Shown piece after piece: positions 21,601-63,295 of a stretch of 64,000 nucleotides of DNA. Below the pieces are notes generated by a model, which searched no databases, was not told where the DNA came from, and was given only the letters and a program-made list of their open reading frames with translations. The position numbers and the translations under genes were made by a program. This DNA comes from Macrostomum lignano (Eukaryota), in the NCBI GenBank assembly GCA_002269645.1, contig NIVC01002877.1:1-64000 (forward strand), read 5' to 3'. Numbering within the stretch: the first letter of the stretch is position 1; the number at the start of each line of letters is the position of its first letter.

Positions 21601-21982
21601 AAAGATCCTTTGCTAACTCGGCTTCACCGCTGCTAGTCTGAGAATGGCCCGCCTCACTTACAGAGTCATCAATACTACTGGCACTCACAACCGGCATTGC
21701 CGTAGCCGCAGTCGCCGCCGTCGTCGCCGTCGTTGCAGTCGCCGCAGTCGCGGCAGTCGCCACAGGCGCAGCAGTCACGGCAGTCTGATGAGCAGTGATG
21801 AATTGAGTGACACATTTCATAGTGTCTTGAAACTGCTGCTCCACTTGATCCAGCTCGTCCAGAAGTTTGTCTCGAGCTTCTTCTGTGGCTTCTTGCTGAA
21901 GGAGCTCATCATAGAATTTATCAAGTAGCTTCACGCACTCATGCTGCAGTGGCTGCATCGCACGCTTGCTGGATCGCTTCAT
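18696..21982 (-). pseudogene. BEL/Pao gag-protease-RT, frameshifted
   Basis: Gag with DUF1759-like IPKFGG...W..F, Cys/His knuckles (CLLCQDQHELWKC; CRHGRRCGIGECNKFHHRLLH), protease ALLDDAS, RT VFDAS / DISEMYLQI / YMDD, and an RNase H tail QWR.V.T..HPADALS. Confidence 0.9.
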
Positions 21983-25700: not shown

Positions 25701-27440
25701 GATTTTAACCAATTTAGTTTTAGTCTTATTGTTAGCAAAGTAAGTCTCCTCATCGAGGTAGTAGCGACGACGAGTTTTGGGCTCCGTCAAAATATTCACT
25801 TTGCTTCCCGCACTTCCAATACAGCCAAAGTCGCGGTTTCCAGCCGGAAACAGGTCGTCCATGTTCATGTCGAACAGCTGATCGATGGGCTTCAGCTTGA
25901 ACTCGAACGGCTTCACATAGTCATTGATGGAGGCGATCCACCTGTGGTACAGCTGCTTGAATGCCGGAGTGTAAAAGTCAATGAGGGCTTCTGCGATCTC
26001 CGGAGTTCCTCCCTGAGCCTCGACGGTTGTCTGAGTAAACTCGGACTCGCTGGAACTGTGAGACTCTTGATTATGTTCTTTTCTTGTGCTTCTGTGCTGG
26101 CTCTCCAACCTTTCACTGCTCGATTTTGTTGTAGTCGTTTTCTTGGGGCCAAGACCCAAAAAGCCCGTCCGGGTGGTTTTCTGAGAATTTTTTGACTGCA
26201 GCGATGAAAACATTGACTGGAACTCGGTCTCAGCCAGACTGGCAAACTCTTCCGACGACGCAAACTTGTTTGTCTTTGCTCTCTTTGTGATTTTTAGCTG
26301 ACCGCCGAACTTTCCAGACCGGATAAAATGCGTGCCCCAGCGTAGCAGAAAGTCTTGAAATTTGCTGGCAGCGCCCACTGAAAAGTAGGACTCTGGAAGA
26401 CTCATGTAGTCTCTGAGCGCAGCGAAGTTTATGTCATTAGGCTTCACATCATCCAGTGAAATTTTGTACATGATTACACTCACATACATGATGGCAAAGA
26501 AATCCTCAGTAGAACCTTGTTTTCTTGTAGCCTGGGAATACTGTAAATTTACTGAGGCTGATTGACTGCTAGTGGTTGTTGACGAGCTGCCAGAGCTCTG
26601 CCGCCCCGCCTTAGAAGTGCTGTGCTGGCGAGATTCGCTTAAGAACAAATTTCGCTGCTCTGACAGACCGGCTTTGTCCCTGATGTAGCTCATGTACTCG
26701 TCCGCAGACCGGAACGACTTGGTCTCAGCTGTGGTCTCGAAGATGCCATACACGTTCATGGTGTCGGGCACGTCCTTGTCCAGAAAGCTGCCCATGTTGG
26801 AACAGTAGCGCTGCACCAGACTGGCTTTGCGGCTCTCGATCTTGTAGAATCCTCGTCCGTCGAAGCCGACGCCGATGTACGCGGCAGCGTCCAGGAGGTT
26901 CATGCAGATTGTATTGCCATTGCCAGGAACCTTGCTGGAGTAGCACTTGCTAGTCTTGGGATAGGATGCACCTGTGCACCCATTCATCAACACCGGACCA
27001 ACCCCCATTGGATAGACATAGACGGGCATCTTGTCTTCTGCCTCTTCCTTCATTTTTTCAGGCTCGCCCACAGTCTCCGTCATCACCCAATTCGAAGGCT
27101 GATAGTTGGAGAATCCGTTGAAGCCCTGCTCGGCCTGCAGACTGATGGATCTCGTGCCTGCTTTCTGCGTTTTTGCCGAGCGGTCTGTCAGCATGTTTTT
27201 TAGAATTTCCTTGGTGATGAGTGGGGTGGCTTGACCGTCAGTTGATTGCGTGAGATCATCCAGCAAGTCCTTGGTCTTCTTGTCTGAGTTGCTGATTGCG
27301 TTTGCAATCGCGTCTACAGCCGGACCGTACTGCTCCAGGGCGTTGGCATCGACAGTCTTGCTGGTGTCTTTTTCTGCAGCTTCAACTTGAAGAAATCCAA
27401 GCAATGCAATTGCGATCACTGCAGCCAGACAGGCGTGCAT
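22706..27440 (-). CDS. Secreted MACPF-domain protein with Cys-rich ephrin-receptor-like (GCC2/GCC3) repeats; exons 27440..23219 and 23118..22706, ~1544 aa
   Basis: Signal peptide MHACLAAVIAIALLGFLQVEA; MACPF signature WGTHFIRSGKFGG; many CPAG(S/T)F repeats. A 100-nt intron (GTAAGT ... CTAAC ... TTTCAG) in phase 1 joins the 149-aa ORF in frame. Confidence 0.9.
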
Positions 27441-28192
27441 TTTCGAAGCCAGCAAGTTGCTTCAGATTGAAGTAAAATTCGATTGGTTTTTGACGCTTCT
27501 TGAATCAGTTCGAGTCGGTTCTGAAGGAGTTATGATAGCAAATATGAAAGTGAGCAATGTCCAATGTACTGAAATTTTGAAGTACGCTCGTATCTACGAG
27601 TAGATACTAAAAGCATGAAAACAGATGGGGCCCGCTCCAGATTGTTCTTTTGTCCCCACCCCCACGCTCGCGCTACCCGTGTTCAATTGGCGATCCTCAG
27701 CTAATGTTTGACTGCATTTCTTATTTTTCCATTTGCTGAACAAGATAGATTTTGAAATTTTGAGCAAGTCAGATTGTGTTGCAGCTGAGAGTTAAGTTGA
27801 GCAGGAGACCGGAAATTCGAACCCTCTCTCTAGAAGGGGGGGCTGCTACATAAACTGAAATTTCACAACGCCGAAAATTTGCATGGTACCTAGTACATTT
27901 TCACTATGTGAAATTTCGGTCCGATGAAATTTCGGTATTGAAAAGGCATGATTCTTTTGGCGTTGCCTTTTCGCTAGAAAGCGACCCCTCTCTCTCACTC
28001 TTCGTCTGACCATAAAGATCTAGAACTAGAAGCTACAAGCTATTAAAAGCTACTAGATCTAGATTTCCTTGGTCTTACTCACCCACGAGTGGATGTACAA
28101 AGACCCACCCTTCCCCTCCCCTCTCGGCAAGTTTGCTTGGCCAGTCTGGCTCCAACATGCCCCCCACGGCCCACATCCACACCAACTCCGGA

Positions 28193-28721
28193 CTGCTGTC
28201 CCCTGGCTAACTTTAAAACTGAAGTCCGTGCACTCGCTGCTGTCCCCTGGCTAACTTCAAAACTGAAGTCCGTGCACTCGCTGCTGTCCCCTGGCTAACT
28301 TCAAAACTGAAGTCCGTGCACTCGCTGCTGTCCCCTGGCTAACTTCAAAACTGAAGTCCGTGCACTCGCTGCTGTCCCCTGGCTAACTTCAAAACTGAAG
28401 TCAGTGCACTCGCTGCTGTTCCCTGGCTAACTTCAAAACTGAAGTCCGTGCACTCGCTGCTGTCCCCTGGCTAACTTCAAAACTGAAGTCCGTGCACTCG
28501 CTGCTGTCCCCTGGCTAACTTCAAAACTGAAGTCAGTGCACTCGCTGCTGTCCCCTGGCTAACTTCAAAACTGAAGTCAGTGCACTCGCTGCTGTCCCCT
28601 GGCTAACTTCAAAACTGAAGTCAGTGCACTCGCTGCTGTCCCCTGGCTAACTTCAAAACTGAAGTCCGTGCACTCGCTGCTGTCCCCTGGCTAACTTCAA
28701 AACTGAAGTTAGTGCACTCGC
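28193..28721. repeat. 44-bp tandem repeat, about 12 copies
   Basis: Unit CTGCTGTCCCCTGGCTAACTTCAAAACTGAAGTCCGTGCACTCG. Confidence 0.95.
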
Positions 28722-28949
28722 TTGAACTCGAAAAAATTATACCCTATTCTGGGGTATCAATGGGAAAAATAGTGCCCCAAATCAGTTGACTATTAACCCT
28801 TGGGGTACTAATTGGGGAAAAAAGAACCCTGCCACAGAGTCGTACGGAACTACTCGAGCAGTCTGGTCCCAGTGACTGTAAGTGACCGTGGCAACCTGGT
28901 CTGCACACGAGCTTGGGTTGGCCTCTGGCTCTCAAACACGACAAGAGAA

Positions 28950-29953
28950 ATGGGGAAGGAGAGGGATGGGGAAGGAGAGGGATGGGGAAGGAGAGGGATG
29001 GGGAAGGAGAGGGATGGGGAAGGAGAGGGATGGTGAAGGAGAGGGATGGGGAAGGAGAGGGATGGGGAAGGAGAGGGATGGGGAAGGAGAGGGATGGGGA
29101 AGGACAGAGATAGGGAAGGAGAGGGATGGGGAAGGAGAGGGATGGGGAAGGAGAGGGATGGTGAAGGAGAGGGATGGGGAAGGAGACGGATGGGGAAGGA
29201 GAGGGATGGGGAAGGAGAGGGATGGGGAAGGAGAGGGATGGGGAAGGGATCGGTAAGAAGAGGGATGGGGAAGAGATGGGTAAGAAGAGGGATGGGGAAG
29301 GAGAGGGATGGGGAAGGACAGAGATAGGGAAGGAGAGGGATGGGGAAGGAGAGGGATGGGGAAGGAGAGGGATGGGGAAGGAGAGGGATGGGGAAGGAGA
29401 GGGATGGGGAAGGAGAGGGATGGGGAAGGAGAGGGATGGGGAAGGAGAGGGATGGGGAAGGAGAGGGATGGGGAAGGAGAGGGATGGGGAAGGAGAGGGA
29501 TGGGGAAGGGATCGGTAAGAAGAGGGATGGGGAAGGGATGGGTAAGAAGAGGGATGGGGAAGGAGAGGGATGGGGAAGGAGAGGGATGGGGAAGGACAGA
29601 GATAGGGAAGGAGAGGGATGGGGAAGGAGAGGGATGGGGAAGGACAGAGATAGGGAAGGAGAGGGATGGGGAAGGAGAGGGATGGGGAAGGAGAGGGATG
29701 GGGAAGGGATCGGTAAGAAGAGGGATGGGGAAGGGATCGGTAAGAAGAGGGATGGGGAAGGAGAGGGATGGGGAAGGAGAGGGATGGGGAAGGACAGAGA
29801 TAGGGAAGGAGAGGGATGGGGAAGGAGAGGGATGGGGAAGGAGAGGGATGGGGAAGGAGAGGGATGGGGAAGGGATCGGTAAGAAGAGGGATGGGGAAGG
29901 GATGGGTAAGAAGAGGGATGGGGAAGGAGAGGGATGGGGAAGGAGAGGGATGG
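28950..29953. repeat. ~1-kb purine-rich 16-bp minisatellite (TGGGGAAGGAGAGGGA)n
   Basis: Read directly; the long Pro-rich and Gly-rich ORFs in all frames are artefacts of the repeat. Confidence 0.95.
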
Positions 29954-30122
29954 CAAAACTGCCTACTACATTGACTCGTGCCTGCGAAACAACCAAAACC
30001 GACCTCAATGTGAATTGAAGAATATGAAAAATTCCAATGTGCCCAATTTTATGCAACAAAAACCCCTTGCAGGGATAGCAAAATATTTCTTAAATAATCT
30101 ACACTTACTGATTCGAATATCA

Positions 30123-31164: not shown

Positions 31165-31775
31165 CCTTCGCAGCTCAAAAATTTTCCAAGTTTTTTTACT
31201 TTCTTTGAGTTTTTCTAACTTAGAAACGCTTCTAATAAAATGCAAAAAACAAGAATATAATTGCAAACATTTGCAATTACAATATCCTTACAATATCCGC
31301 TCGAAACTTCCCACTTCCCAAGCTCGAAACTTCCCACTTCCCAAGCTCGAAACTTCCCACTTATTGTAAGGAATGCAAATGTTTGCAATTATGTTCTTGT
31401 TTTTTGCATTTCTTAAGCGAACTAGCGTTCCTAAAATTTACTTCTAATAAAAAACCTTTACACCTACTAAAAAATTCAATTCGACTTAGGTTATGACCTA
31501 ATTTATTTCTCAGTCGGTCAGTATGAGTCTCCATTAAGGCTAGCAATATGGTTTCTCAATCTAAATCAAGCCAAAGTTGAGATGCAGATTCCACACCGTG
31601 ACGAAATTCAAGTGGAACTCAGCCAGCATGACGATAAGTATGATAAAAGCCTGTTGTGATGCAGAGTCAGAGTTCAGTCAGTCATTTTTTCTACAATTTT
31701 TTCACTGCATTTCGAGTCGAAAAGCCAGCTTAACCTTTGCAAATAGCATGTTTTTCGAAATTCACTCACTCGAAG

Positions 31776-32360
31776 CATCAAGTCAAACATAATAGAGGCA
31801 CCATGTAAAACATAAGCGAAGCGTCATGTCAAACATAATAGAGGCACCATGTAAAACATAAGCGAAACGTCATGTCAAACATAATAGAGGCACCATGTAA
31901 AACATAAGCGAAGCCTCATGTCAAACATAATAGAGGCACCATGTAAAACATAAGCGAAGCGTCATGTCAAACATAATAGAGGCACCATGTAAAACATAAG
32001 CGAAACGTCATGTCAAACATAATAGAGGCACCATGTAAAACATAAGCGAAGCGTCATGTCAAACATAATAGAGGCACCATGTAAAACATAAGCGAAGCGT
32101 CATGTTAAACATAATAGAGGCACCATGTAAAACATAAGCGAAGCGTCATGTTAAACATAATAGAGGCACCATGTAAAACATAAGCGAAGCGTCATGTTAA
32201 ACATAATAGAGGCACCATGTAAAACATAAGTGAAGCGTCAAGTCAAACATAATAAAAGCGTCATGTAAAACATAAGCGAAGCGTCAAGTCAAACATAATA
32301 AAAGCGTCATGTAAAACATAAGCGAAGCGTCATGTCAAACATAATAAAAGCGTCATGTTA
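31776..32360. repeat. 46-bp tandem repeat, ~10 copies, decaying into shorter variants
   Basis: Unit GTCATGTCAAACATAATAGAGGCACCATGTAAAACATAAGCGAAGC. Confidence 0.95.
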
Positions 32361-32536
32361 CACTTAAAAGAAGCATTATGTCAGAAATTATAAAAGAAAA
32401 TTAAAGAAGCGTCATCTCGAACATAAAATATTCTTTGAGGAATGCTAGGATGTCAGGGCTCGTGGAAAATATATCTGAGATCAAAGCTGGTATAATATTC
32501 TTGGTATAATTCTTGTGACTGTTAGGGAGAATTGAT

Positions 32537-32641
32537 CAGATATCAAGGCTTACTAGGGGATTTGCTGCGATGTCAAGGCTTACTGGGGGAGTTGCTGCGA
32601 TGTCAAGGCTTACTGGGGGAGTTGCTGCGATGTCAAGGCTT
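32537..32641. repeat. 30-bp tandem repeat, ~3.5 copies
   Basis: Unit GATGTCAAGGCTTACTGGGGGAGTTGCTGC. Confidence 0.9.
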
Positions 32642-33264
32642 ACTGGGGGAGTTGCTGCGATGCACTTGCACTGCAAAAGTGCGCGACACAACACGTGCGT
32701 TAAATAGATCACAGACCCTGAAGATTACCTTTGATCTACCGAAACGCGTTCGTTTACCAATTTAAAGCAACCTATACATTGATTTCCAAGGGCGCATGCG
32801 GGAGGGGGCTGGATCCAGCCGGATAAGTGTTTTGGTGTGGGCCAGGATGACCTGCTCTCCGGGATGCCACGAAGAGGCTGCACCTACGTCCGAGATCGTG
32901 CGATCTCCTCGATCTGTTGACCATGCGGGCTGCTACTGCCGTGTGTTTCTGTTAGTTCAAACTATTGGTCCCATTATCTCCTGCGCCATGAGATTCTACG
33001 CTCGTAAGGAGTGCCGTATCTAGTTAGTGTAGATTGGCTGGCCAATCGCTGTTAGCGGGGCCGGGGGGCTTGTCGTCGCCCGTGTTTGGGGGTGCTTGGT
33101 CCGGGGGTGGGTGCGCCGCCCCCGGGGCGGGGGTGGGTGTCTGTGGGGCCTTTTAGCCCCGTGGGTTGTGCCCGCCTCAGGCTATCTCTCCTCGCCAGCT
33201 TGCATGCGTTTTTTTTGCGATTTTTGGCTAGCCCAACTTAATTACTCAACTTACTCTGGGTACT

Positions 33265-34257
33265 ATGAGTTTGCGTAGGATGACTGTAAATCAGCTACGT
33301 GAAGAATTGACAGATAGGGGCCTGAGCACACACGGCTACAAGAAAGACCTGGCCAGCAGACTCTCCACTGCGATGAACCAGAGCGAAGCAGCTAGTCGGC
33401 GGGAACAAGCGGCGTCAAACTCCGCGGAGACCGACAGCGAAGGTCGGCGGCAGCAGCAGCAACAACGGCTGGAGGCAGGGGAGGCGCTGGACCTAGCAGA
33501 GCTCCGGTGGAAGATAGCTAGCCTGGAATCGGAGACGGCAGCAATGCGCCAGCAGCTGGAAGGCCGATTTAGACCAGGTGAGGTGGACCAACAGCTTCTT
33601 AATGAGCCCTCTGATTGTAGTAGCGACATGAATATCCCGAGTATGCTCAGAGGTCCCGGGTTCGAGACCAGGCTCGAGCCCTCAGTAGCTCAACTAGGGC
33701 TACGGGCGGCACCACTCGTCGTTGCGGATTTCTGCGGTTGCGACCCTCGGACGGCGTCGGCGAGTCGTAGGGAAAAGGTGCTGCATCCAACCGCCAATCA
33801 GCCTAAACCCGAATCGCTGGGAATCGGTCAGTGGATAGTCGGCAACGCGCGCATCCTCGACGCCCTGATCTCTAGGGGACAGCTCGACCTGGAAGGCGTT
33901 CGGCAGTACTTGCAGTACAGTGTGCAGATCGGTGAGCTGGTCGAGGCAGGTTACGACACCACCAGGATCATGCGGTTTGACGACGCATTTAGAAGAGAGC
34001 AGCAGGCGGGCATGCAAGACTGGGCGCGACCGAGTTTCTCGCTGGTGGCACGGCACCTCATCGCCCCGCAGCAGACTCCACAACATGCCCGTTCTCGCAT
34101 GGACAGGAAGATTCCTATGGTTCAAGGAGCGCCCGTCTGCCTCAAGTTCAACACCCGTGGTGGCTGCAAGTTCCAGAATTGCAAGTACACTCATGCGTGC
34201 CGAGTCTGCTTGCGCTCGGACCACAGCGAGACGCAACACGCGGCAAAAAACGAATAG
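33265..34257 (+). CDS. Gag-like ORF1 with N-terminal SAP motif, coiled coil and C-terminal Cys/His finger
   Basis: MTVNQLREELTDRGLSTHGYKKDLASRL (SAP-like); VCLKFNTRGGCKFQNCKYTHACRVC...H. Confidence 0.88.
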   Translation: MSLRRMTVNQLREELTDRGLSTHGYKKDLASRLSTAMNQSEAASRREQAASNSAETDSEGRRQQQQQRLEAGEALDLAELRWKIASLESETAAMRQQLEGRFRPGEVDQQLLNEPSDCSSDMNIPSMLRGPGFETRLEPSVAQLGLRAAPLVVADFCGCDPRTASASRREKVLHPTANQPKPESLGIGQWIVGNARILDALISRGQLDLEGVRQYLQYSVQIGELVEAGYDTTRIMRFDDAFRREQQAGMQDWARPSFSLVARHLIAPQQTPQHARSRMDRKIPMVQGAPVCLKFNTRGGCKFQNCKYTHACRVCLRSDHSETQHAAKNE

Positions 34258-36089
34258 CCGCGGCTCCAGTGGCCTCGGCAAGCTGGCAGCCGCAAATTTT
34301 AATCCCAAGTTTTTACTCCATTCGCGACATCAATTTCAATCCGAGTGGCTCCCTTGACGCAAATGCCTGGGCGAAGGAGCTGAACGGCGACCCCAACGGG
34401 CCTTTTTTAATTGACGGAGTCCAAAACGGCTTCGCGCTCACTACTGAAACAGATTTTAAGCCTTCCGAAGTTGAGAACTACTCGTCCGCCATTGAGTACA
34501 AGACGCTGGTTGAAGAGCAATTGCAGCGTGAGATCGCCAGCGGGCGGTATGTGTCAGTCAGCCGACGCCCGTGCAAGATCTCAGCGCTTGGTGCCATCCC
34601 GAAAGAGGACGGTGGAGTCCGTATCATCCACGACTGCAGTCGTCCGGAAGGCTGTGCGGTCAACGACCACTTTATCGCAGACCACAAGATTAAGTTTGAA
34701 ACGGTTAGCGGCCTCTGCTCACAACTCAAGCCCGGTGACTTCACGGCCAAGATCGATCTCAAGGAGGCGTATCGCTCAGTGGGTGTTCATCCTTCTTCTC
34801 TCGACGCTCTGGGCATCAAATGGCAATTTAGCGGCGACAGTGAGCCTACCTACCTGGTCGACACCCGGCTGAGCTTCGGCGCTGCGGCCTCGGTGTACCA
34901 TTTCAACAGGCTGTCTAAGGCGGTGGTGCGCATGATGCAACGGCGCGGGTTCACCTGCATTGGCTACCTCGACGACTTCGCTGTGGCCGGGAGCACCTAC
35001 GAGTCCTGTGTCGAGGCTTACGAGAGCTTGAGGAGCCTGGCGACGAGCCTCGGTTTCACCATCAACGAAAAGAAGTCTAGCGGGCCGTCGCGGCGCACGG
35101 TTCTCCTGGGCGTCCTGATTGACACAGAGTCGGGGATGCTGAGCATCCCACCGGCCAAGCTCAGTGCACTCAAAGACGCACTTGGGAGCTGCTTGCATCG
35201 ACGCGGTGCCATCAGCAAGCGCGACCTTCAGCGGATCTGCGGCAAGCTGTCCTGGGTGAGCAGCGTGACCAGGAAAGGCCGAGCTTCCATCCGCCCTCTA
35301 CTGATGCTGGCGAGCCGGGCGACTAGACCTGGGGACAAATTGCGGCTGACCCCGCACCTCACTGAGCTGCTGCACTGGTGGAGGAGAAGCCTTCAGTCCG
35401 TTGGCTGCGCGCCCATCTGGCCTCGCTACGCTCGAAGGATCGTCATCGAGACTGACGCCTGCAACTCGGGTGGTGCCTGCATTGTTCGGGAGGCCAATAA
35501 ATCCGACTGGCTCTACATCAACTGGAAGAACGACGCTGGTGGCCGTTTTGCTTCGGCCCACATCAACGTTAAGGAGACCATCACGCCTGTCCTCAGCATC
35601 CTCGCGGCCCCGGGCCGCTTCGCCGGTGCGGACATCGTCGTGTACAGCGATAGCTCGGCAGCTGTCGGTGCGCTGAACAAGCTCAGCTCGCCATGTAACG
35701 ACGTCAACCGGCTCCTGCACACGCTGTCGCTTGCCTGCGACGCGTGGGGTCTGCGGCTGCGGGCCTTTCACGTTCCAGGCGCCTTCCAGGTCCTGGCGGA
35801 CCCGGCCTCTCGCCTTGCTTCTAGAAGCGGGGCGCAGAATTTCTTTCTCCGCTTCTACCGTAGCCTGCATGATTTAGCTGCTGAATCCTGCTGCATCTCG
35901 CGCCACGCACTCTGCCCTGCCTCCGCCTCCCTTTTGCTTTTGCAGGTCCGGCGCCTCCTGCCTCCCGCCTACCCGGGCCGCTCCTTCGCTTTCTCGCCGA
36001 CGCCTGGGCTCCTAGTACGAGGGCATCGTACGCTTCAAACCTCGAACAGTGGCAGCGCTTCTGCAACCTCGAAGGTGTTCAGCCACTAG
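34179..36089 (+). CDS. Reverse transcriptase-RNase H (ORF2)
   Basis: KIDLKEAYR, RLSFG, YLDD; RNase H motifs IETDAC, HINVKE, VYSDS and VLADPASR. Confidence 0.95.
   Translation: MQVHSCVPSLLALGPQRDATRGKKRIAAAPVASASWQPQILIPSFYSIRDINFNPSGSLDANAWAKELNGDPNGPFLIDGVQNGFALTTETDFKPSEVENYSSAIEYKTLVEEQLQREIASGRYVSVSRRPCKISALGAIPKEDGGVRIIHDCSRPEGCAVNDHFIADHKIKFETVSGLCSQLKPGDFTAKIDLKEAYRSVGVHPSSLDALGIKWQFSGDSEPTYLVDTRLSFGAAASVYHFNRLSKAVVRMMQRRGFTCIGYLDDFAVAGSTYESCVEAYESLRSLATSLGFTINEKKSSGPSRRTVLLGVLIDTESGMLSIPPAKLSALKDALGSCLHRRGAISKRDLQRICGKLSWVSSVTRKGRASIRPLLMLASRATRPGDKLRLTPHLTELLHWWRRSLQSVGCAPIWPRYARRIVIETDACNSGGACIVREANKSDWLYINWKNDAGGRFASAHINVKETITPVLSILAAPGRFAGADIVVYSDSSAAVGALNKLSSPCNDVNRLLHTLSLACDAWGLRLRAFHVPGAFQVLADPASRLASRSGAQNFFLRFYRSLHDLAAESCCISRHALCPASASLLLLQVRRLLPPAYPGRSFAFSPTPGLLVRGHRTLQTSNSGSASATSKVFSH
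34245..34293 (+). promoter_or_regulatory. Predicted -1 ribosomal frameshift signal
   Basis: Heptamer A AAA AAC (34245-34251) in the ORF1 frame, 8-nt spacer, then stem GCGGCTCCAG / CTGGCAGCCGC; the -1 frame is ORF2. Confidence 0.7.
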
Positions 36090-36958
36090 CGGCGTCCCCG
36101 GTGCACTTGGTCGAGTATGTGCGACGCCTGGCTAAGCGCGGCGTGGCACCCGGTAGCCTCGGTGGACACCTGGCAGCCATCAGCTGGAGCTTCAAGCTGG
36201 CGCAACTCCCCGACATCACCAAGTCCGGCCTGATCGATCTGGCAGTTAAGAGCGCCAAACTGACAAGCGGCCATTCAGTCAAGCAGAAAGACCCCATCAC
36301 CCCGGCTGTTCTGCTTTCACTGGCAAACCAGGTGAACCCAAGAGACCCTGCAGACGCCGCCTTTTGGGCCGCCGTGCTCTGCTGCTTCTGGGCGCTTCTC
36401 AGGAAAGCAAATGTCTGCGGGCGCCACTCCATTCTCGTCGGCGACACTCAGGCCGATAGTCAGTGCTGGAGACTCCGAGTTCGACAGTCGAAGACCAACC
36501 AATGCGGACAAGACTACCAGGAGGCGGTGCTGCCAGCGCTCGGAAGCCACCCACTATGCCCTGTCCAAGCCCTGCGGCGGCATTTTCAGACTAACAAGCT
36601 GCGGTCTGCGCCGGCGCTCACTCGGCTGTTTTGCGTCCACATCGCCGGAAGCTGGTGCCCGATGTCATCGCGTCAATTCGACCGCCGCCTCGCTCGGGCT
36701 CTGACAGATGCGGGTTGGGCGGCGACAGCTTTCTCAGGCCACTCTCTACGACGGGGTGGCGCCTGTCTGGCGTTCGACAGCGGCCTCGACGTGGAGCAGA
36801 TCAAGCGGCTGGGCGGCTGGCGCAGCGGCGCCGTTTCACGCTACCTGCCGCAGTCGGGAGGTTGCCTCCGTCTCCTGCGCCCAATGGTCAACCGTGTGCT
36901 GTCGGCACCTCCTAGCGCTCGCCTGACTCGCCCCGTCGCCGTGTACCCTACTTTTTAA
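35946..36958 (+). CDS. Tyrosine recombinase (ORF3); frame open from ~35885, overlapping RNase H
   Basis: AWAPSTRASY N-terminal domain upstream of the called GTG start; catalytic LLRK, KT, GHSLRRGGA and GGWRSGAVSRY. Confidence 0.93.
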
Positions 36959-38572
36959 TCCGTTTGTTCGGGTTTTTGGGATGTTTTGCTCGTGCTCTGC
37001 AATCCTTGCCTTTGCTCTCTCCCTCCGGCCGTTCCGCTAAGTGTAGATTGGCTGGCCAATCGCTGTTAGCGGGGCCGGGGGGCTTGTCGTCGCCCGTGTT
37101 TGGGGGTGCTTGGTCCGGGGGTGGGTGCGCCGCCCCCGGGGCGGGGGTGGGTGTCTGTGGGGCATTTTTAGCCCCGTGGGTTGTGCCCGCCTCAGGCTAT
37201 CTCTCCTCGCCAGTTTGCATGCGTTTTTTTTTCTGCTTTTAGCCCTCTTTCTCGCAATTCCTGCAACTTCTTTTTTCCTTTCGCTTCGATTACCTTTTAC
37301 TCTTCCAAATAGTTTTTTCGAATGCTTTCCAAATATACTCGTGTCTCGTAAGTTGCCCATACAGGGCGGTAGGATGTTTTGCTCGTGCTCTGCAATCCTT
37401 GCCTTTGCTCTCTCCCTCCGGCCGTTCCGCTAAAGGCAACTTAGCACCAGGACTATTTTCATCTATCGGAATAGCGCGTAAAATCTATCGTAAAACGTAC
37501 AGGAAAGTCGAATTCAGCACGCCAGTGAAGTAATAGACAGGCTAGGCTTATGGGCTAAGGTCTGCGATGCTTCACGCCTGCCCCTATCTTCAGCAGGTTA
37601 AGGCCGGTGGGAGGTCTGCACTCCCTGTTTGCCTCTGGCAGCCGCAGACTCTCCCACGCTGTCTCGCAAATCGACCCAGGGGTACCCGTCCCCGCGAGTG
37701 TTTAAGGCAGACCCTAGGGCTGCTGGACAGACTGTGCTCAGGTTCCGACGCTGGCCACCCATCCAATGGCTTTTGCCGAACTTGGGTATGCGGGTCTAGC
37801 TCGCCAGTCCGCAGGTTGTGTTACTGCTTATCCGCGTACTCTCTAATCCCTAAGGTGTTTGACCGTGCCCATGGACTGGAAGGCCGGGGAGTAGTCCGGT
37901 AGCTAGCTGTATCAGCAAGCCAAATCAGGACCTGCAAGATCCAAGCGACCGAGGAATGCATCATCGCCATCTCACCGCTGACGAACAAACTCGCGATTCT
38001 GCTTTTCTCTCGCATTGCCAGCTCCATCAGTCGAGTCAATTTAGCCTTCTTCGGAAAGTGATATGAGCTGTTAAAGCAGCAACTGCCACTTGCGTGTTAC
38101 TCAAGCCCTCAGTCTGAGGAAATTTTTTCCATCTGGCAGCCGGCTTTCACTCATTGGCATTCCTCCCCAATTATGGACAACAGTCGCGAAATATGGAAGC
38201 AAGCAGAATTCTCTTCCTTGCCTGATCTTCGTTTTCGATCCGTGCAAAAATGACTGAAAGCCGCAACTGGCATTATCGCATGCGGGGGTGGGCGGAGCTT
38301 GGCTCTATTTTAGTCGCAATTTAGGCATAACACTGCGACGTTGCTATGGGACTGCAGATGCTAATGTGCTCAGCAGTTTGACTTCTTGGATAGAGAGGGA
38401 GATAGTTGGGGTTGCTGGGCCAAAAACGGGAGCATCAATTTGGCCATGCGTCAATCAGTAGCCACGAGAGCAGTCATCTAATTTAGCAGCACCCAGCTGA
38501 GCTACAAATACAAGCGCGGGGGCCTGAGGCTTCGCTACCCATGCAGATTAAACAGCTCTCACTGTTCCGGCC

Positions 38573-45425: not shown

Positions 45426-46609
45426 GACCGTTTAAAGTCACATTTGCATAACACCTTTGCATGGGTTCGTCGACTGCCTGCTGACTGGCGCCAGCGTCCG
45501 GATTCGGCCGGCGGGGTGGCCTTCGCTCGCGGCCTTGGGTGCTCAGAGGCGCACCATGTTTTTTTATAAAACTTGACAGCGTTTTCTGTACAAAAAATCA
45601 ATTTTTTCGAAATCCGTTTTGAGAACAGAACTCTGCATGCATTTGTGTTTTGCAAGTCTTCAATGATATTTTTCAAATAAAGACTTTAATTAACTCGCGA
45701 ATCAACCTCAGGTAGAACTACCTGCTCTGCTTGAAGTTGATTCGGAAGTTCAGAGGGTGAGATTTGGCGATTTTAGTCCTATAAAACTGAAAAATTCCAA
45801 CCGGCCTCGGGTAAATTTTGTGAGCTCGGCGTCTTCTTCTTTAGATGTCGAGGAACAGGTCTACATGTGAAAAGGGGTGCACAGCATTGCCAGCATACAG
45901 GGCCATGGTCGCCCAGTAAGCGTCTTCAACTGGGCGCTTCATTAATCGCCTACGATGATCACTTTCGATCCAGCACTCATGACCATCCCTAATGGATTGG
46001 CTGCCCCGAGTCAGCTCTAACTTAATTAGCGAAATCTAGAAGAGGAACCTCTTCAGAAGGCGCCCGCCCTCCGATGCGAACTCACGCCCTTCTGCCGCCC
46101 CTTCTGCGACAGAACTGGACAAGACAAGAAGCGGGCGCTGTGTCAGAAATCCGTTCAATTTTCAGCAACCGGCATGCAGCAAGGCACCGGGCGGATGCCT
46201 GAATAATGCGCTAATTATATGCCACAAAAGGTGGGCCGAGATCGCGCCTCCGTCCGGCTGGGATAATTAAAGGAAAAATCCTTCGTCATCAATCAGCGGC
46301 CCGTTGCCAAAAGATCTGGATTTCTCCGAATCCCAAAGCACAGTATTCTCAGAAATGGATCACATGCTCCGCGTCTCAACAACACCCTATTATCCTTGAC
46401 TTGTTTTGGTTAACAAGCGAGGAAAAGTTTCCGGCCCGTTTGTTTTTCTGTCAATCCCGTCCTTTACCTCATGTTTTCCGCATCACTTTTCCTTTTGTAG
46501 CACCCGCGCTGTCTTGGGAAACTGACTCTGTGTGTGACAGCATGCGTTGAGGAGTTAGAGACAGCTAAAGCTTTAGGATTTTAAGATTAGGGCGAGGTTG
46601 GCAGTCAAC

Positions 46610-54422: not shown

Positions 54423-55110
54423 CTACTCGTCTCCAGCCCTTTTGACGAATCCGCTCGACCAGCGCTGACCAGCTCGCTTACCGAAGCCGCTCGACCAGCG
54501 CTGACCAGCTCGCTTGCCGAAGCCGCTCGACCAGCGCTGACCAGCTCGCTTACCGAAGCCGCTGGACCAACGTTGATCCGGTCGCTTACCGAATCCGCTC
54601 GACCAGCGCTGACCAGCTCGCTTACCGAAGCCGCTCGCCCAGCGCTGACCAGCTCGCTTACCGAAGCCGCTCGACCAGCGCTGACCAGCTCGCTTACCGA
54701 AGCCGCTGGACCAACGTTGATCCGGTCGCTTACCGAATCCGCTCGACCAGCGCTGACCAGCTCGCTTACCGAAGCCGCTCGCCCAGCGCTGACCAGCTCG
54801 CTTACCGAAGCCGCTCGACCAGCGCTGACCAGCTCGCTTACCGAATCCGCTCGACCAGCGCTGACCAGCTCGCTTTTTTAAACCCTCACGCTGAGGCTGT
54901 TCGCTCGAGAGTTCGCGAGCAAGAGGCGCGACTTCATCGTCCTGTTCAGCTTCGTTTAGTTCTGCAACAAGCAATGCTGAGTCGGCTTATTTTGAGCGCC
55001 CAAGAAGATTATTCTTGATGTGCAAGTCTCAGCAACTTACCGTTTGTCTGGGCAGAAACGACCACAGCGAATATTACAGCCAGACACACCAGCCGCCAAA
55101 TGTATTGCAT
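54423..55110 (-). CDS. Neuropeptide precursor, two exons (55110..55041 and 54961..54423), 202 aa, 12 KR-flanked QRW(S/A)SGF peptides
   Basis: Signal peptide MQYIWRLVCLAVIFAVVVSA; 79-nt phase-1 GTAAG...TTGCAG intron; acidic spacer; GKR amidation and cleavage sites. Confidence 0.93.
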
Positions 55111-60549: not shown

Positions 60550-63295
60550 TTAACCCGCAACTCCACAAGCAGCAAAAGGAAGGAAAGGCGGCAGGTTGGC
60601 AGCGAGCACAAAGCAGCGACGAGGTGGGGAAGGCGACCCCAACCCCGAAAAAAAGAAGAAGCGGGGGAAGTTAGTGATAATTAAAAGAAGCAGCAATCCG
60701 CTGGACGGCGGAGCGCCTGCGGGCAAAAACTGCATCGTCCGAGAAATAGCGGAAGACGGAGTCGGAGCGCCAGTCACCAAGGCAGCGGATGTCGGCCACG
60801 GAGAGGCCACCCCGGAAGGCGGCGCTGGCTCCGCCGCTACGCAGACTGTGGCCAGAGAAGTTTTCCTCAGGGATGCCGCAAATCGACAGGCCCCGCTTGA
60901 GCAGGCGGATGAAGGTCGAGGCAGCCAACGGGATTCTGCGGGCGCCCAGGACAGCTAAGAGAGGCTGGTGCGGCTCGACAACTTGGTTCTCACGCAGATG
61001 AGTGGCGAGGGCAGAGACCGGGCATTGCGGGCAGTCGGTGCATTGCGGAAGGAACACTAGCAGCTGACGCTCCTTGAACTGGTTGGTCTTAGACTTGCCG
61101 ATGGTCAGGCGGAGGCCGCCAGGGCAAGTCGACAGCGCGCCGCGGCGCAAAGCAGCGCCAGTGGTAGACGGAAGAAGCTCGCCCAGACGAAGGACGCCCC
61201 ACCAGGCATCCAGCAGCGCAGCCTTGAAGGCCACGAAGAGGCGCCGGGGCAGCAATTGCTGAAGCAGAGGGCTGTTGCAGAGCAGACGGAGATGATGCGG
61301 CTGCAGTGGCTCTGCCCTGCGTGGCTGCCTGCTTAGTAGGCGTCGGGCTCCGCGACAGACGAGAGCCAGTCGGGCGTTGTCCTTGGTGGGGTCCGGTGCT
61401 GCTGTCGCCCTGTGGATGAAAGACACTGCGCTGAGGCTGATTTGCACGCTTGAGTAGGAGGCGCAGCCTCGCTCCAAAAGGAAGGCGGTGAAGTTGCAGA
61501 CGTCTGACTTCGATGCGGCCGTGGGGAAGACCCGCTGCTGTCGACAGAACTCCCTCCAGAGCTGCAGGTGGCTGGCATACGACTTCCGGGTGCTGGGTGC
61601 GAGCGACAGGCGGCACAGGATGGGCACGGACACGGCGGGGCGGTGGGGAGCGCGGCTGCGACCTGTGAAAGAAACAGTGGTGCGGGACACGTGCAGAGAT
61701 GGTGTGCGAGACAAATTCAGTAGGACAGACACACAAAGAGCCATAGTGGCGACAGCAAAAGTTCACGAGCTCATGCTTTGAGCTCAGCATCCGAGAGGCC
61801 GAGTCACCAGTGAGCTGCATGTGAGCGGGAAGATGAAACGCCTGCAGCTGGATCCCAGACTCGAGGCACAGGAGGACCACCGTCTGGTAGATTCGAATAA
61901 GCGATGGATGCCTGCAGGACAGCTTTTCGGATTAGACCACCACCCGGCTGTTGAGATGCTCGTGGAAGCGCAGGATGTTGAGGAGCGGAGCCAGGGCCTC
62001 CTTGTAGTTGATGTGGAGGTCTTTGAATTCTGACTCGAAGTCGTGCTCCCAGCTGAAGTACGCCCAGTCGTTGAAGCGGGTGCCGCTTACGATGCCAGCG
62101 GCGCCCTCGGAGCTGCTGTCGGACTCGATGGTTACCAATTGGTGAAAGCACGGGTGCAGCGGCGTAGGTGGCAGCGAATCCACTGCCTGCAGCCACCATT
62201 GCAGCAGATCGCGAGCTTCTTGAGGCAGCCGGAGATCTCGACCGTCGCTGATGAGGTCAAAAAGCGGGCGAAGAGACGGATGCAGCAGCTTGTTGATCTA
62301 GCCCAACCAGCACAGCTTCCCGGCCAGCCTCTCCAGCTGCTTGAGCTTGACAATCTCACGGGAGAGGCAGTCCTTCAGCAAATCCCTGGTGCTGGCGGCC
62401 TTGTCCATGGGTAGCGACAGCGTGCAGTCAATTGTGTCGATTTGAACGCTGAGGAAGACCATCTGCTGTGTTGGGGCCGTGGACTTGCTCCAGTTGATGG
62501 TGAAGCCCAGGTCTTGCAGGAGGTGCACCAGGTAGTCGTAAGCGCATTCAGCTGCTTCCTGTGAGTCGCCGGCAACCGCCCAGTCGTCCAGGTAGTTGAC
62601 CGTAGCTTGGAAGCCTTGCCTAAGCATGTGGCGATAAATGGCGGCTGAGAGACGGTGAAAGATCTCGCAAGAGGCCGAGCACCGAATGGCAGCCGGGAGT
62701 CGACGAGCACCGATGATTCGGTGTCAGCTGCGAAACGCCAGCTGAGGCCCGTCAACGCCTGATCGTCCGGGTGGATGCCGACAGAGCGGTAGGCCTGCTT
62801 CAGATCGACCTTGCCGATAAACGAGCCGGGCCGGATGTGACGCAGCAGATCCTGCACGGAGGAGAATCTCAGACTCCGCCCCTGCTCATAGCTGTCGTTG
62901 ACCGAAGAGCCGGAAGGACTGGACAGATCGTGAATGATCCGAACACTGCCGTCAGACTTAGGGATCGCGCCGATAGCGTTCACTATGACGCGTCCGCTAG
63001 CGTTCACTATGACGCGTCCGCTAGCGGGTTTTAAGCGGCCAAGGCGGCCGGAGCTCTTCAGAGAGTTGCTTGTCCACCTGCTCGGCATGGTCAGTAGCAG
63101 AACGGTAGTTGGCAGAATTCGTGAAGGCAGGCGGAGGTTTGTTCATGAGGCGGAAGCCGTTATGAAGGCCTTTTCGGAGGAATCTCTCGTCTGGGTCGTT
63201 GCGTAGCAAAAGATTCCAAGAAGCCAGGTTCATGTCAGAAGACAGCACCCTATGCGGCGGGGGAGGCGGGTCGGGTTGGCGGGCAGGGGTGATAG
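60550..63295 (-). mobile_element. Second Ngaro/DIRS-type YR retrotransposon, 5'-truncated, RT/RH frameshifted
   Basis: RT pieces (KVDLKQAYR, RLPFG, YLDDW), RNase H pieces (IESDSS, HINYKE) and an intact YR ORF. No gag and no split repeats seen. Confidence 0.9.
60671..61744 (-). CDS. Tyrosine recombinase, 357 aa
   Basis: SLAPSTRKSY, VLRLGE, KSKTNQ, GHSLRSGGAS and LGDWRSDSVFRY. Confidence 0.92.
   Translation of the reverse strand: MALCVSVLLNLSRTPSLHVSRTTVSFTGRSRAPHRPAVSVPILCRLSLAPSTRKSYASHLQLWREFCRQQRVFPTAASKSDVCNFTAFLLERGCASYSSVQISLSAVSFIHRATAAPDPTKDNARLALVCRGARRLLSRQPRRAEPLQPHHLRLLCNSPLLQQLLPRRLFVAFKAALLDAWWGVLRLGELLPSTTGAALRRGALSTCPGGLRLTIGKSKTNQFKERQLLVFLPQCTDCPQCPVSALATHLRENQVVEPHQPLLAVLGARRIPLAASTFIRLLKRGLSICGIPEENFSGHSLRSGGASAAFRGGLSVADIRCLGDWRSDSVFRYFSDDAVFARRRSAVQRIAASFNYH

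What the first reader, a model, noticed from the sequence alone, without database searches (positions are those of the whole stretch)
33265..36958. Predicted spliced SAP-domain/tyrosine-recombinase fusion, with the acceptor conserved in a second divergent element
The YR frame has no AUG before its catalytic core. A strong acceptor CCCTTTTGCTTTTGCAG|G (exon start 35946) lies just upstream of the conserved APSTR..Y N-terminus, in phase 1. ORF1 has a near-consensus donor CCAG|GTGAGG (intron start 33578), also phase 1, right after the SAP motif and coiled coil. Splicing removes the rest of gag and nearly all of RT/RH and yields a 441-aa SAP-coiled-coil-YR protein. The second element has the same acceptor (GTTTCTTTCACAG|G, exon start 61662) at the same place and in the same phase. 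The recombinase would thus gain a DNA/chromatin tether and possibly an oligomerisation link to Gag, like env splicing in retroviruses but for the integrase function. I do not know of this being described.
Basis: partly seen in the sequence, partly recalled or inferred. Interest (0 to 1): 0.85.

Follow-up and report, generated by a model that had tools for sequence, protein, structure and literature searches.

The report
Spliced Gag-head/recombinase mRNA in Ngaro-like retrotransposon
An intact flatworm retrotransposon appears to make its start-codon-less recombinase from a spliced message that borrows the start and DNA-binding head of its Gag gene, and the same intron turns up in related elements of at least four other animal phyla.

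Summary
Element 1 (33026-37433, + strand) is an intact Ngaro-type tyrosine-recombinase (YR) retrotransposon, almost certainly in Macrostomum lignano.

- **Splice sites.** The YR frame opens at 35885 and has no ATG before the catalytic domain. GT 33578 is the best donor match of 124 GTs. AG|35946 is the best acceptor of 242 AGs. Both are phase 1.
- **Acceptor conservation.** Among 73 distinct related loci, the best acceptor-like site upstream of the YR core is phase 1 in 57 (p = 6e-15). It lies 17-28 codons before the invariant Thr.
- **Donor conservation.** The top donor in ORF1 is mostly phase 1 and sits in the linker after an N-terminal module.
- **Gene models.** Four RefSeq models (limpet, oyster, amphioxus, tardigrade) and UniProt A0A1I8J2F9 (M. 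lignano, element-2 family) carry this join. In the four RefSeq loci I located the intron: one phase-1 intron of 2.2-2.8 kb holding RT/RH.
- **Rivals.** Frameshifting, a short intron from pol and spliced-leader trans-splicing all fit poorly.

No transcript reads could be inspected, so splicing is inferred. I found no description of it in the papers searched.

Verdict: interpretation supported; a new variant of a known kind; interest 0.7.

The parts
33026..37433 (+). Element 1: an intact Ngaro-type YR retrotransposon, running from the first base of repeat A1 to the last base of repeat B2
   Evidence: Split direct repeats. Three open frames in the order gag, RT/RH, YR.
33026..33228 (+). Repeat A1, matching A2 at 37040-37243
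   Evidence: 129 nt at 99% identity plus 78 nt at 92%.
36979..37040 (+). Repeat B1, matching B2 at 37372-37433
   Evidence: 62 nt at 100% identity.
37040..37243 (+). Repeat A2
37372..37433 (+). Repeat B2
33265..34257 (+). ORF1 (Gag-like, 330 aa): SAP head, long helix, gag core and a CCCH-type zinc knuckle
   Evidence: The gag core is homologous to ORF1 of the related loci.
33274..33363 (+). SAP domain (ORF1 aa 4-33)
   Evidence: Pfam PF02037, 30.5 bits, E 2.6e-7. The AlphaFold2 model shows helix 3-18, a loop, then a second helix.
33328..33570 (+). One long helix (ORF1 aa 22-102), the putative coiled coil
   Evidence: AlphaFold2 single-sequence model, mean pLDDT 84 and above 90 over aa 61-100. 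Coiled-coil pairing itself was not tested.
33265..33577 (+). Predicted exon 1 coding part (104 codons plus 1 nt), shared by Gag and the spliced YR message
   Evidence: Phase arithmetic. The RefSeq models have analogous first exons of 113-144 codons plus 1 nt.
33578..35945 (+). Predicted intron (2368 nt, GT...AG) that removes the gag core and RT/RH
   Evidence: Best donor of 124 GTs and best acceptor of 242 AGs. Homologous introns of 2168-2833 nt occur in the four RefSeq models.
34245..34251 (+). A_AAA_AAC heptamer in the gag frame, the candidate -1 frameshift site for Gag-Pol
   Evidence: It is the only X_XXY_YYZ site in the gag/pol overlap and lies 2 codons before the gag stop.
34260..34293 (+). 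Hairpin 8 nt after the heptamer
   Evidence: -23.7 kcal/mol, z-score -1.7.
33993..36089 (+). pol frame (RT/RH); it has no ATG at its start and is in the -1 frame relative to gag
   Evidence: Pfam RVT_1 E 5e-13. The RNase H-like motifs were read by eye.
35924..35945 (+). 3' splice site: a pyrimidine tract (15 of 17 Y) followed by CAG
   Evidence: The position and phase are conserved in relatives.
35946..36958 (+). Predicted exon 2 coding part: the tyrosine recombinase (2 nt, 336 codons, stop)
   Evidence: Invariant residues R152, K182, H265, R268, W291 and Y299 in alignment A2.
60671..63242 (-). Element 2: a 5'-truncated, degenerate copy of a second family. The gag gene is absent, pol is broken and the YR gene is intact.
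   Evidence: The pol match starts at element-1 pol residue 56 and carries 2 frameshifts and 2 in-frame stops.
61734..63242 (-). Element 2 pol remnant (a broken gene)
60671..61744 (-). Element 2 YR ORF (357 aa, with an ATG at 61744)
   Evidence: It is 95% identical to UniProt A0A1I8J2F9 from the junction Gly onward.
61663..61684 (-). Element 2 3' splice site; the exon starts at 61662, phase 1
   Evidence: The A0A1I8J2F9 junction falls exactly here.

Best explanation
Element 1 is an intact Ngaro-type tyrosine-recombinase retrotransposon of Macrostomum lignano that uses two messages.

- **Unspliced RNA.** It serves as the genome and as the message for Gag (ORF1). Through a -1 ribosomal frameshift at A_AAA_AAC (34245-34251) it also gives Gag-RT/RH.
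- **Spliced RNA.** Part of the RNA is cis-spliced from the 5' splice site inside ORF1 (33577|33578) to the 3' splice site just upstream of the recombinase core (35945|35946). Both sites are in phase 1.
- **Product.** The resulting subgenomic message uses the Gag AUG. It encodes a 441-aa protein made of the Gag head (SAP domain plus long helix) fused to the recombinase, which has no AUG of its own.

The same design recurs across a wide clade of related elements in animals: an N-terminal module of ORF1, a phase-1 intron holding RT/RH (and the gag core where it could be recognised), and the recombinase. The module varies between SAP, SAM/HhH-like and coiled coil.

- **Shown here:** the sites, their phases, their conservation, and gene models with this exon structure.
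- **Inferred:** that the RNA is actually spliced, that Gag-Pol arises by frameshifting, and that the shared head gives the recombinase DNA binding and/or association with Gag.
For: **In the window.**
- Donor 33578 is the best of 124 GTs and acceptor 35946 the best of 242 AGs.
- The phases match, and the YR frame has no ATG before its catalytic domain.
- Element 2 has its acceptor at the identical codon distance.

**Host and host norms.**
- M. lignano proteins are 85-97% identical to window sequence.
- The host splice motifs are GT[G/A]AG and CAG (PMC8629364).
- The mean host intron is 1.1-1.4 kb (PMC5730564).

**Gene models.**
- A0A1I8J2F9 joins SAP plus coiled coil to the YR at the predicted acceptor. 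It shares its head with the gag models A0A1I8I1E9 and A0A1I8I2Y6.
- XP_050388701.2 (Patella vulgata), XP_019639177.1 (Branchiostoma belcheri), XP_055356622.1 (Paramacrobiotus metropolitanus) and XP_062617009.1 (Saccostrea cucullata) each have one GT-AG phase-1 intron of 2248, 2833, 2352 and 2168 nt.
- Each of these introns encloses RT/RH; a gag core was recognisable in the Patella and Saccostrea introns.
- The limpet and amphioxus loci have perfect A1..B1-A2-B2 repeats.

**Survey of 73 distinct related loci.**
- The best acceptor-like site is phase 1 in 57 (binomial p 6e-15). Control windows inside pol and YR give 36% phase 1.
- Of the 57 phase-1 loci, 37 have no in-frame ATG upstream of the YR core. 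The YR frame opens a median of about 10 codons before the acceptor.
- The top donor in ORF1 is phase 1 in 17.6 of 23 loci, against 9.6 of 22 in pol.
- The donors lie in the linker after the N-terminal module, at the same alignment column in related pairs.

**Against frameshifting as the route.**
- The YR frame relative to pol is -1 in 18 loci, +1 in 12 and the same frame in 9.
- In 12 of 39 loci pol ends before the YR frame opens.
Against: - No RNA-seq reads, cDNA or peptides could be examined, so splicing is inferred from sequence and from annotation pipelines. Those pipelines may be partly ab initio.
- M. lignano models disagree on the donor. A0A1I8G0Z6 joins from inside RT. UPI0007A1322A uses a 79-nt intron from the pol tail.
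- Element 2 and about a third of the phase-1 loci have an in-frame ATG near the acceptor. Splicing may therefore not be obligatory everywhere.
- The donor enrichment is modest, about 2-fold over pol.
- No other copy of the element-1 family was available to test donor conservation within that family.
Confidence: 0.78

Rival explanations
1. The acceptor is a spliced-leader (SL) trans-splice site. The YR region is cut out of the element RNA as its own SL-capped message, as happens with downstream genes of M. lignano operons.
For: About 30-39% of M. lignano genes are SL trans-spliced, and polycistronic precursors are common (PMC5730564, PMC8629364). The element-1 acceptor TTGCAG fits the trans-splice motif [T/C]TNCAG (PMC8629364).
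Against: - The SL given in PMC8629364 ends in ATG. Joined to 35946, that ATG falls in the pol frame, not the YR frame, and would open only a 48-codon ORF (arithmetic).
- A strong cis donor lies upstream, which favours cis-splicing (PMC8629364 cites that rule).
- Conservation of phase 1 across 57 of 73 loci only makes sense if the upstream exon is coding.
- The RefSeq models in other phyla are cis-spliced.
Confidence: 0.06
2. The YR is made as a Pol-YR fusion through a short intron that runs from the tail of the pol frame to the same acceptor. Candidates are GT 35860 in element 1 (86 nt) and the 79-nt intron used by model UPI0007A1322A in the element-2 family.
For: An intron running 35860-35945 would join pol frame 0 to YR frame 2. 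The model UPI0007A1322A (P0066) joins ...CRHYGS to FRAPNRP in this way.
Against: - The donors are poor: GTAGCC matches 4/9, and the other is GTGTGT.
- The two donors lie at different positions and in different phases in the two elements.
- P0066 uses the second AG rather than the one directly after the pyrimidine tract. It is also an obviously chimeric model that runs on into the neighbouring gene.
- Only 3 of 39 related loci have an in-phase donor scoring 7/9 or better in the pol tail.
- In 12 of 39 loci pol ends before the YR frame opens.
Confidence: 0.05
3. No splicing is involved. The YR is translated from the full-length RNA by a second -1 frameshift from pol, by termination-reinitiation, or from a non-AUG codon.
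For: - In element 1 the frames step -1 from gag to pol and -1 from pol to YR, and pol overlaps the YR frame by about 200 nt.
- ORF overlap is the textbook description of DIRS-order elements (PMC9210276).
Against: - The pol/YR overlap has no canonical slippery heptamer; it holds only C_CCG_GGC. The gag/pol overlap does have A_AAA_AAC plus a hairpin.
- Across relatives the frame offset is -1, +1 or 0, with no overlap at all in 12 of 39 loci.
- This reading does not explain a conserved pyrimidine-tract-AG in a fixed phase.
Confidence: 0.07
4. The splice-like sites are chance matches or reflect protein-coding constraints such as Phe/Ser/Leu-rich codons. The gene models are artefacts of predictors bridging frames.
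For: - Gene predictors do bridge frames in transposons, as P0066 and P0070 show.
- Element 2 has an ATG of its own.
Against: - Rank 1 of 124 and rank 1 of 242 in element 1.
- Phase 1 in 57 of 73 loci against 36% in control windows, with higher scores (Mann-Whitney p 4e-8).
- The amino acids across the tract vary while the YnNYAG pattern stays.
- Two annotation sources, RefSeq and the UniProt M. lignano proteome, give the same exon pair in five genera.
Confidence: 0.04

Closest known systems
Ngaro-like retrotransposons (DIRS order; Goodwin and Poulter 2004, as summarised in PMC9210276 and PMC3266345)
   Same: - Gene order gag-like ORF, RT/RH, tyrosine recombinase.
- Split direct repeats A1...B1-A2-B2.
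- No methyltransferase domain.
- Animal hosts.
   Different: The papers I could search describe three separate or overlapping ORFs. They do not mention introns or splicing (PMC3266345, PMC9210276, PMC6681497, PMC4157794). Here the recombinase appears to be the second exon of a message that starts in ORF1. A SAP head on ORF1 is not mentioned in those papers.
Avian sarcoma/leukosis virus env message (from my own knowledge of retrovirology; not checked with the tools)
   Same: A single intron removes gag-pol. The 5' splice site lies inside gag, so the downstream protein uses the gag AUG and begins with gag-derived residues.
   Different: There only about six gag codons are borrowed and the product is the envelope protein. 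Here about 104 codons forming a folded DNA-binding head are borrowed and the product is the integrating enzyme.
Foamy virus pol message (from my own knowledge)
   Same: The enzymes, including the integrase, are translated from their own spliced subgenomic message rather than as a Gag-Pol fusion.
   Different: Foamy Pol uses its own AUG and carries no Gag residues. The enzyme is a DDE integrase, not a tyrosine recombinase.
Drosophila copia and plant BARE spliced gag messages (from my own knowledge)
   Same: Splicing of a retrotransposon RNA sets the ratio of its products.
   Different: In those elements splicing removes pol to make more Gag, and no fusion of a Gag head to an enzyme results.
Classical -1 frameshift Gag-Pol expression (retroviruses and many LTR elements)
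   Same: Element 1 has A_AAA_AAC in the gag frame, an 8-nt spacer and a hairpin at the gag/pol overlap.
   Different: This explains Gag-Pol only. The pol/YR boundary lacks such a signal.

Membership tests
Ngaro-like YR retrotransposon | Gag-like ORF, then RT/RH, then tyrosine recombinase, all on one strand | tested here: met
   ORF1 with a CCCH knuckle, RVT_1 at E 5e-13, and Phage_integrase plus a SAM-like N-domain.
Ngaro-like YR retrotransposon | Split direct repeats A1 ... B1-A2-B2 (definition in PMC9210276) | tested here: met
   A1 33026-33228 matches A2 37040-37243, and B1 36979-37040 matches B2 37372-37433. A 128-nt unique stretch lies between A2 and B2.
Ngaro-like YR retrotransposon | No methyltransferase domain after RNase H (PMC3266345, PMC9210276) | tested here: met
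   The pol frame ends about 90 codons after the RNase H-like ADxxSR motif. Pfam reports no further domain.
Ngaro-like YR retrotransposon | RT/YR sequences group with reference Ngaro elements in a tree | not tested
Tyrosine recombinase | Match to the family profile | tested here: met
   PF00589 at 27.2 bits against a cut-off of 27.1 (marginal), plus the SAM-like N-domain PF02899. There were 62 homologues at E <= 1e-5.
Tyrosine recombinase | Catalytic residues R, K, H-x-x-R, (H/W), Y | tested here: met
   R152, K182, H265, R268, W291 and Y299 are invariant in alignment A2, numbered from 35948.
SAP domain | Match to PF02037 above the curated cut-off | tested here: met
   30.5 bits against 23.9, aa 4-33. 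The helix-loop-helix appears in the AlphaFold2 model.
SAP domain | Binds DNA or chromatin | not testable with these tools
   This is inferred from the family annotation only.
Spliceosomal GT-AG intron inside a retroelement | Consensus 5' and 3' sites with a pyrimidine tract that fit host motifs | tested here: met
   Host motifs are given in PMC8629364.
Spliceosomal GT-AG intron inside a retroelement | The exons join two open frames in phase | tested here: met
   Both sites are phase 1 (arithmetic). The same holds in the four RefSeq models, where exon 1 plus exon 2 translate exactly to the deposited proteins.
Spliceosomal GT-AG intron inside a retroelement | Sites conserved in divergent relatives | tested here: met
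   Acceptor: 57 of 73 loci in phase 1, p 6e-15. Donor: enriched in phase 1 within the ORF1 linker.
Spliceosomal GT-AG intron inside a retroelement | Spliced RNA observed | not testable with these tools
   No M. lignano reads or transcripts were reachable. Exact look-ups of window proteins found nothing.
-1 programmed frameshift (gag to pol) | X_XXY_YYZ heptamer in the upstream frame inside the overlap | tested here: met
   A_AAA_AAC at 34245-34251, the only such site.
-1 programmed frameshift (gag to pol) | Stable structure 5-9 nt downstream | tested here: inconclusive
   a hairpin of -23.7 kcal/mol after an 8-nt spacer, but the z-score is only -1.7.
SL trans-spliced gene of M. lignano (rival) | The leader supplies a usable start for the downstream ORF | tested here: not met
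   The SL ends in ATG (PMC8629364). Joined at 35946, that ATG is in the pol frame, not the YR frame.

The most novel reading that the evidence does not exclude
A whole clade of Ngaro-type retrotransposons across animal phyla (flatworm, molluscs, amphioxus, tardigrade and many unassigned metagenome contigs) expresses its recombinase only as the second exon of an alternatively spliced message. An exchangeable N-terminal module of ORF1 (SAP, SAM/HhH-like or coiled coil) is thereby shared by Gag and the recombinase. That shared head would couple the two proteins to the same nucleic acid or to each other, and would explain why YR ORFs in this order so often lack a start codon.
Probability: 0.6. Interest if true: 0.8.

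Novelty: new variant of a known kind. Interest (0 to 1): 0.7.

Why it matters
Descriptions of DIRS-order elements list three ORFs that frequently overlap (PMC9210276, PMC3266345). None of the papers I searched says how the recombinase ORF is translated, and here it usually lacks an AUG.

A conserved phase-1 intron that grafts the Gag head onto the recombinase would have three consequences:

- **Expression.** It gives a concrete, testable route to the recombinase.
- **Annotation.** Hundreds of "uncharacterized protein" gene models in animal genomes would be the spliced recombinase messages of active-looking elements.
- **Regulation and function.** It adds a regulatory step, the ratio of spliced to unspliced RNA, as in retroviruses. 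It also points to a functional role for the variable ORF1 head in integration rather than only in particle formation.

Tried and rejected
- **Exact look-ups.** Searches for A0A1I8J2F9, the element-2 YR and ORF1 in the assembly and transcript collection found nothing. No M. lignano DNA or cDNA beyond the window was reachable.
- **Protein searches.** Searches with P0049 and P0070 returned almost only themselves. No element-1-family protein is in the databases; the best YR hit is 35% identical.
- **Annotation method.** The paper describing the first M. lignano annotation (Wasik et al. 2015) is not held. I could not establish whether the A0A1I8 models are transcript-based.
- **Processed copies.** I looked among the 84 loci for intron-less copies with the head directly joined to the YR and found none.
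- **Frameshifting.** I scanned the pol/YR overlap for slippery heptamers and found nothing canonical, so I rejected frameshifting.
- **ATG after the acceptor.** In 8 loci an ATG follows the acceptor directly. It is out of the YR frame and is explained by Asp codons (x|AT-GAx), so I rejected it as a start codon.
- **Head module of relatives.** Pfam did not recognise it. A profile search against solved structures gave weak SAM/HhH hits.
- **Literature.** Searches combining DIRS or Ngaro with splic*, intron or subgenomic found only engineered reporter introns and nothing on natural splicing.

Full report
**1. What is in the window**

Positions 33026-37433 (+ strand) hold a compact retroelement.

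- **Repeats.** A1 (33026-33228) recurs as A2 (37040-37243). B1 (36979-37040) recurs as B2 (37372-37433). This gives the layout A1...B1-A2-B2.
- **ORF1 (33265-34257, 330 aa).** It starts with a SAP domain (Pfam 30.5 bits against a cut-off of 23.9, aa 4-33) and ends in a CCCH-type knuckle.
- **Head structure.** An AlphaFold2 model of the first 104 residues gives helix 3-18, a loop, and one long helix 22-102. Mean pLDDT is 84. This agrees with a SAP motif followed by a possible coiled coil.
- **pol frame (open 33993-36089).** It carries RT (RVT_1, E 5e-13) and RNase H-like motifs. It has no ATG at its start.
- **Recombinase frame (open 35885-36958).** It matches Phage_integrase and its SAM-like N-domain. 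It has the invariant residues R152, K182, H265, R268, W291 and Y299. It has no in-frame ATG before the catalytic domain.
- **Classification.** The repeats, the gene order and the lack of a methyltransferase domain fit the Ngaro-like superfamily as defined in PMC9210276 and PMC3266345. A tree with reference elements could not be made.

**2. Host**

A UniProt protein of Macrostomum lignano (A0A1I8J2F9) is 95% identical to the recombinase of element 2. A second M. lignano model (UPI0007A1322A) maps exon by exon onto the minus strand between 62324 and 54343 at 85-97% identity. The window is therefore M. lignano or a very close relative.

**3.

- **Donor.** CCAG|GTGAGG has its intron start at 33578 and follows 104 codons plus one base of ORF1.
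- **Acceptor.** CCCTTTTGCTTTTGCAG|G has its exon start at 35946. It supplies two bases and then 336 codons of the recombinase frame. Both sites are phase 1, and the product would be 441 aa.
- **Ranking.** Between 33265 and 35940 this donor is the only 8/9 match to MAG|GTRAGT among 124 GTs. The acceptor ranks first of 242 AGs by pyrimidine tract.
- **Fit to the host.** Both sites match the M. lignano motifs GT[G/A]AG and CAG (PMC8629364). The 2368-nt intron is ordinary for a genome whose introns average 1.1-1.4 kb (PMC5730564).
- **Element 2 (minus strand).** Its acceptor has exon start 61662 and lies at exactly the same codon distance from the conserved APSTR motif, in phase 1. An in-frame ATG lies at 61744.
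- **State of element 2.** It is 5'-truncated and lacks gag. Its pol carries two frameshifts and two in-frame stops. Its recombinase ORF is intact.

**4. Gene models in the same species**

- **A0A1I8J2F9.** It consists of a SAP domain and a coiled-coil stretch joined to the element-2-family recombinase. The join is at precisely the Gly codon predicted from the acceptor.
- **Shared head.** Its head is shared, up to that Gly, with two gag models of the same family, A0A1I8I1E9 and A0A1I8I2Y6. After that point those two continue into the gag core.
- **Disagreeing models.** A0A1I8G0Z6, from a third family, uses the same acceptor position but a donor inside RT. UPI0007A1322A uses a 79-nt intron from the pol tail with a poor donor and the second AG. 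It also runs on into a neighbouring neuropeptide-like gene.
- **Weight.** These models may be ab initio. On their own they are only suggestive.

**5. Comparative test of the acceptor**

- **Data.** A profile of recombinase sequences retrieved 80 related metagenome loci. Four more came from exact look-ups.
- **Method.** I anchored each locus on the invariant Thr of APSTR. I then took the best pyrimidine-tract-AG site in the 5-50 codons upstream.
- **Phase.** That site is in phase 1 in 57 of 73 distinct loci, with 10 in phase 0 and 6 in phase 2 (binomial p 6e-15).
- **Position.** It lies mostly 17-28 codons before the anchor; elements 1 and 2 are at 24.
- **Controls.** The same procedure in pseudo-windows inside pol and the recombinase gives 36% phase 1 and lower scores (Fisher p 7e-12, Mann-Whitney p 4e-8). 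Among sites scoring 18 or more, 33 of 37 real sites are phase 1, against 53 of 133 controls.
- **Sequence pattern.** The amino acids across the tract vary (FAG, FAD, FTG, FSG, VAG...). The nucleotide pattern YnNYAG stays.
- **Start codons.** Of the 57 phase-1 loci, 37 have no in-frame ATG between the upstream stop and the anchor. The frame opens a median of about 10 codons before the acceptor.

**6. Comparative test of the donor**

- **Phase.** In 23 loci with a complete ORF1, the top-scoring GT in ORF1 is phase 1 in 17.6 cases (ties split). The figures are 9.6 of 22 in pol and 9.8 of 23 in the recombinase.
- **Counts.** Sites scoring 7/9 or better number 61, 24 and 5 in phases 1, 0 and 2 in ORF1. 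In pol the counts are 40, 28 and 10.
- **Position.** In an alignment of ORF1 proteins these donors fall in the linker between an N-terminal module and the gag core. They occupy the same column in related pairs.
- **The head varies.** In most relatives the head is not SAP. A profile of it weakly matches the RadA N-domain (E 8e-5), the SAM domains of Caskin and Eph receptors, and the RNA polymerase alpha C-terminal domain. That suggests a SAM/HhH-like fold.

**7. RefSeq models**

An exhaustive profile search showed recombinase homologues with N-terminal extensions of 110-170 residues. Four of them are RefSeq proteins. I located their exons on the genomic loci. In each case exon 1 plus exon 2 translate exactly to the deposited protein.

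| RefSeq protein | Species | Donor | ORF1 codon | Intron (nt) |
|---|---|---|---|---|
| XP_050388701.2 | Patella vulgata | CAA\|GTATGT | 125 | 2248 |
| XP_019639177.1 | Branchiostoma belcheri | AAG\|GTAAGG | 145 | 2833 |
| XP_055356622.1 | Paramacrobiotus metropolitanus | CAG\|GTAATG | 114 | 2352 |
| XP_062617009.1 | Saccostrea cucullata | GAG\|GTGAGT | 142 | 2168 |

- All donors and acceptors are phase 1, and every acceptor has a pyrimidine tract.
- Every intron contains RT/RH. A gag core was recognisable in the Patella and Saccostrea introns.
- The limpet and amphioxus loci carry perfect A1...B1-A2-B2 repeats. They are therefore elements of the same kind, not host genes.

**8. Rivals**

- **Frameshifting from pol.** The pol/YR overlap in element 1 has no canonical heptamer. 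Across relatives the recombinase frame is -1 in 18 loci, +1 in 12 and the same frame in 9. In 12 of 39 loci pol ends before the recombinase frame opens.
- **Short intron from the pol tail.** Only 3 of 39 loci have an in-phase donor scoring 7/9 or better. In elements 1 and 2 the candidate donors are weak and not homologous.
- **Spliced-leader trans-splicing.** It is common in this host. However, the leader ends in ATG (PMC8629364), which falls in the pol frame when joined at 35946. A non-coding leader also would not explain conservation of phase.
- **gag/pol boundary, by contrast.** It has a textbook signal: A_AAA_AAC in the gag frame, an 8-nt spacer and a -23.7 kcal/mol hairpin. Gag-Pol probably arises by frameshifting.

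**9. Mechanism proposed**

- **Unspliced RNA.** It serves as the genome and as the message for Gag and, by frameshifting, for Gag-RT/RH.
- **Spliced RNA.** It is the message for a head-recombinase fusion that starts at the Gag AUG.
- **Shown:** the signals, their phases, their conservation, and matching gene models from two annotation sources.
- **Inferred:** actual splicing, the frameshift, and the function of the shared head in DNA binding and/or association with Gag.

**10. Comparison with what is known, and novelty**

- **Closest parallels (from my own knowledge).** In the avian sarcoma/leukosis virus env message, the 5' splice site lies inside gag, so Env starts with gag codons. In foamy viruses, Pol is translated from its own spliced message.
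- **Literature on this order.** For DIRS-order elements, the reviews and surveys I could search describe separate or overlapping ORFs and never mention introns or splicing. The search is limited to open-access papers and does not include the original Ngaro description.
- **Rating.** I rate this a new variant of a known kind. The main weakness is the lack of read-level evidence.

Noticed in passing
window 34245-34293: A canonical -1 frameshift signal sits at the gag/pol overlap: A_AAA_AAC in the gag frame, an 8-nt spacer and a -23.7 kcal/mol hairpin. It implies Gag-Pol expression by frameshifting.
   Followed up: partly
window 31633-32484 and 32525-32674: Two tandem arrays, with periods of about 23 nt and 30 nt, lie directly upstream of element 1.
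   Followed up: no
window 23211-27455 (-) and 50940-52256 (+): Two host genes. One is a single 1414-aa ORF with a MACPF domain and ten ephrin-receptor-like repeats. The other is a rhodopsin-family GPCR.
   Followed up: partly
window 18696-21982 (-): A fragment of a BEL/Pao-like LTR retrotransposon, with a DUF1759 gag, an aspartyl protease and an RT.
   Followed up: partly
window 54343-62324 (-) and 46600-49083 (+): The database model UPI0007A1322A (P0066) is a chimera. It fuses RNase H and the recombinase of element 2 to exons of a neighbouring gene that encodes GxRWSSGFGKR-type repeats, resembling a neuropeptide precursor. Weaker repeat ORFs of the same type lie at 46600-49083.
   Followed up: partly
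window 12001-14000, 28001-30000, 63300-63750: Two AT-rich blocks, one of GC 0.25 and one at the 5' truncation point of element 2, plus a strongly purine-skewed block (GC skew 0.43, AT skew 0.30).
   Followed up: no
L005, L006, L008, L014, L018, L019, L055, L073 (ORF1 N-termini): Relatives carry a head of about 70 aa that Pfam does not recognise. A profile of it weakly matches SAM and helix-hairpin-helix domains (RadA N-domain, Caskin and Eph SAM domains, RNA polymerase alpha C-terminal domain). The head seems exchangeable between lineages.
   Followed up: partly
L085 3739-8639; L086 3814-9126: The limpet and amphioxus RefSeq 'genes' lie inside elements whose split direct repeats are 99-100% identical. 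These are likely young copies annotated as uncharacterized host proteins.
   Followed up: partly
L009, L014, L016, L033, L040, L042, L048, L051 (just after the acceptor): Eight of 73 loci have ATG immediately after the acceptor AG. In the seven phase-1 loci it is out of the recombinase frame and reflects Asp codons (x|AT-GAx) at the start of the exon, not a start codon. L033, whose best acceptor-like site is in phase 2, was not checked.
   Followed up: yes
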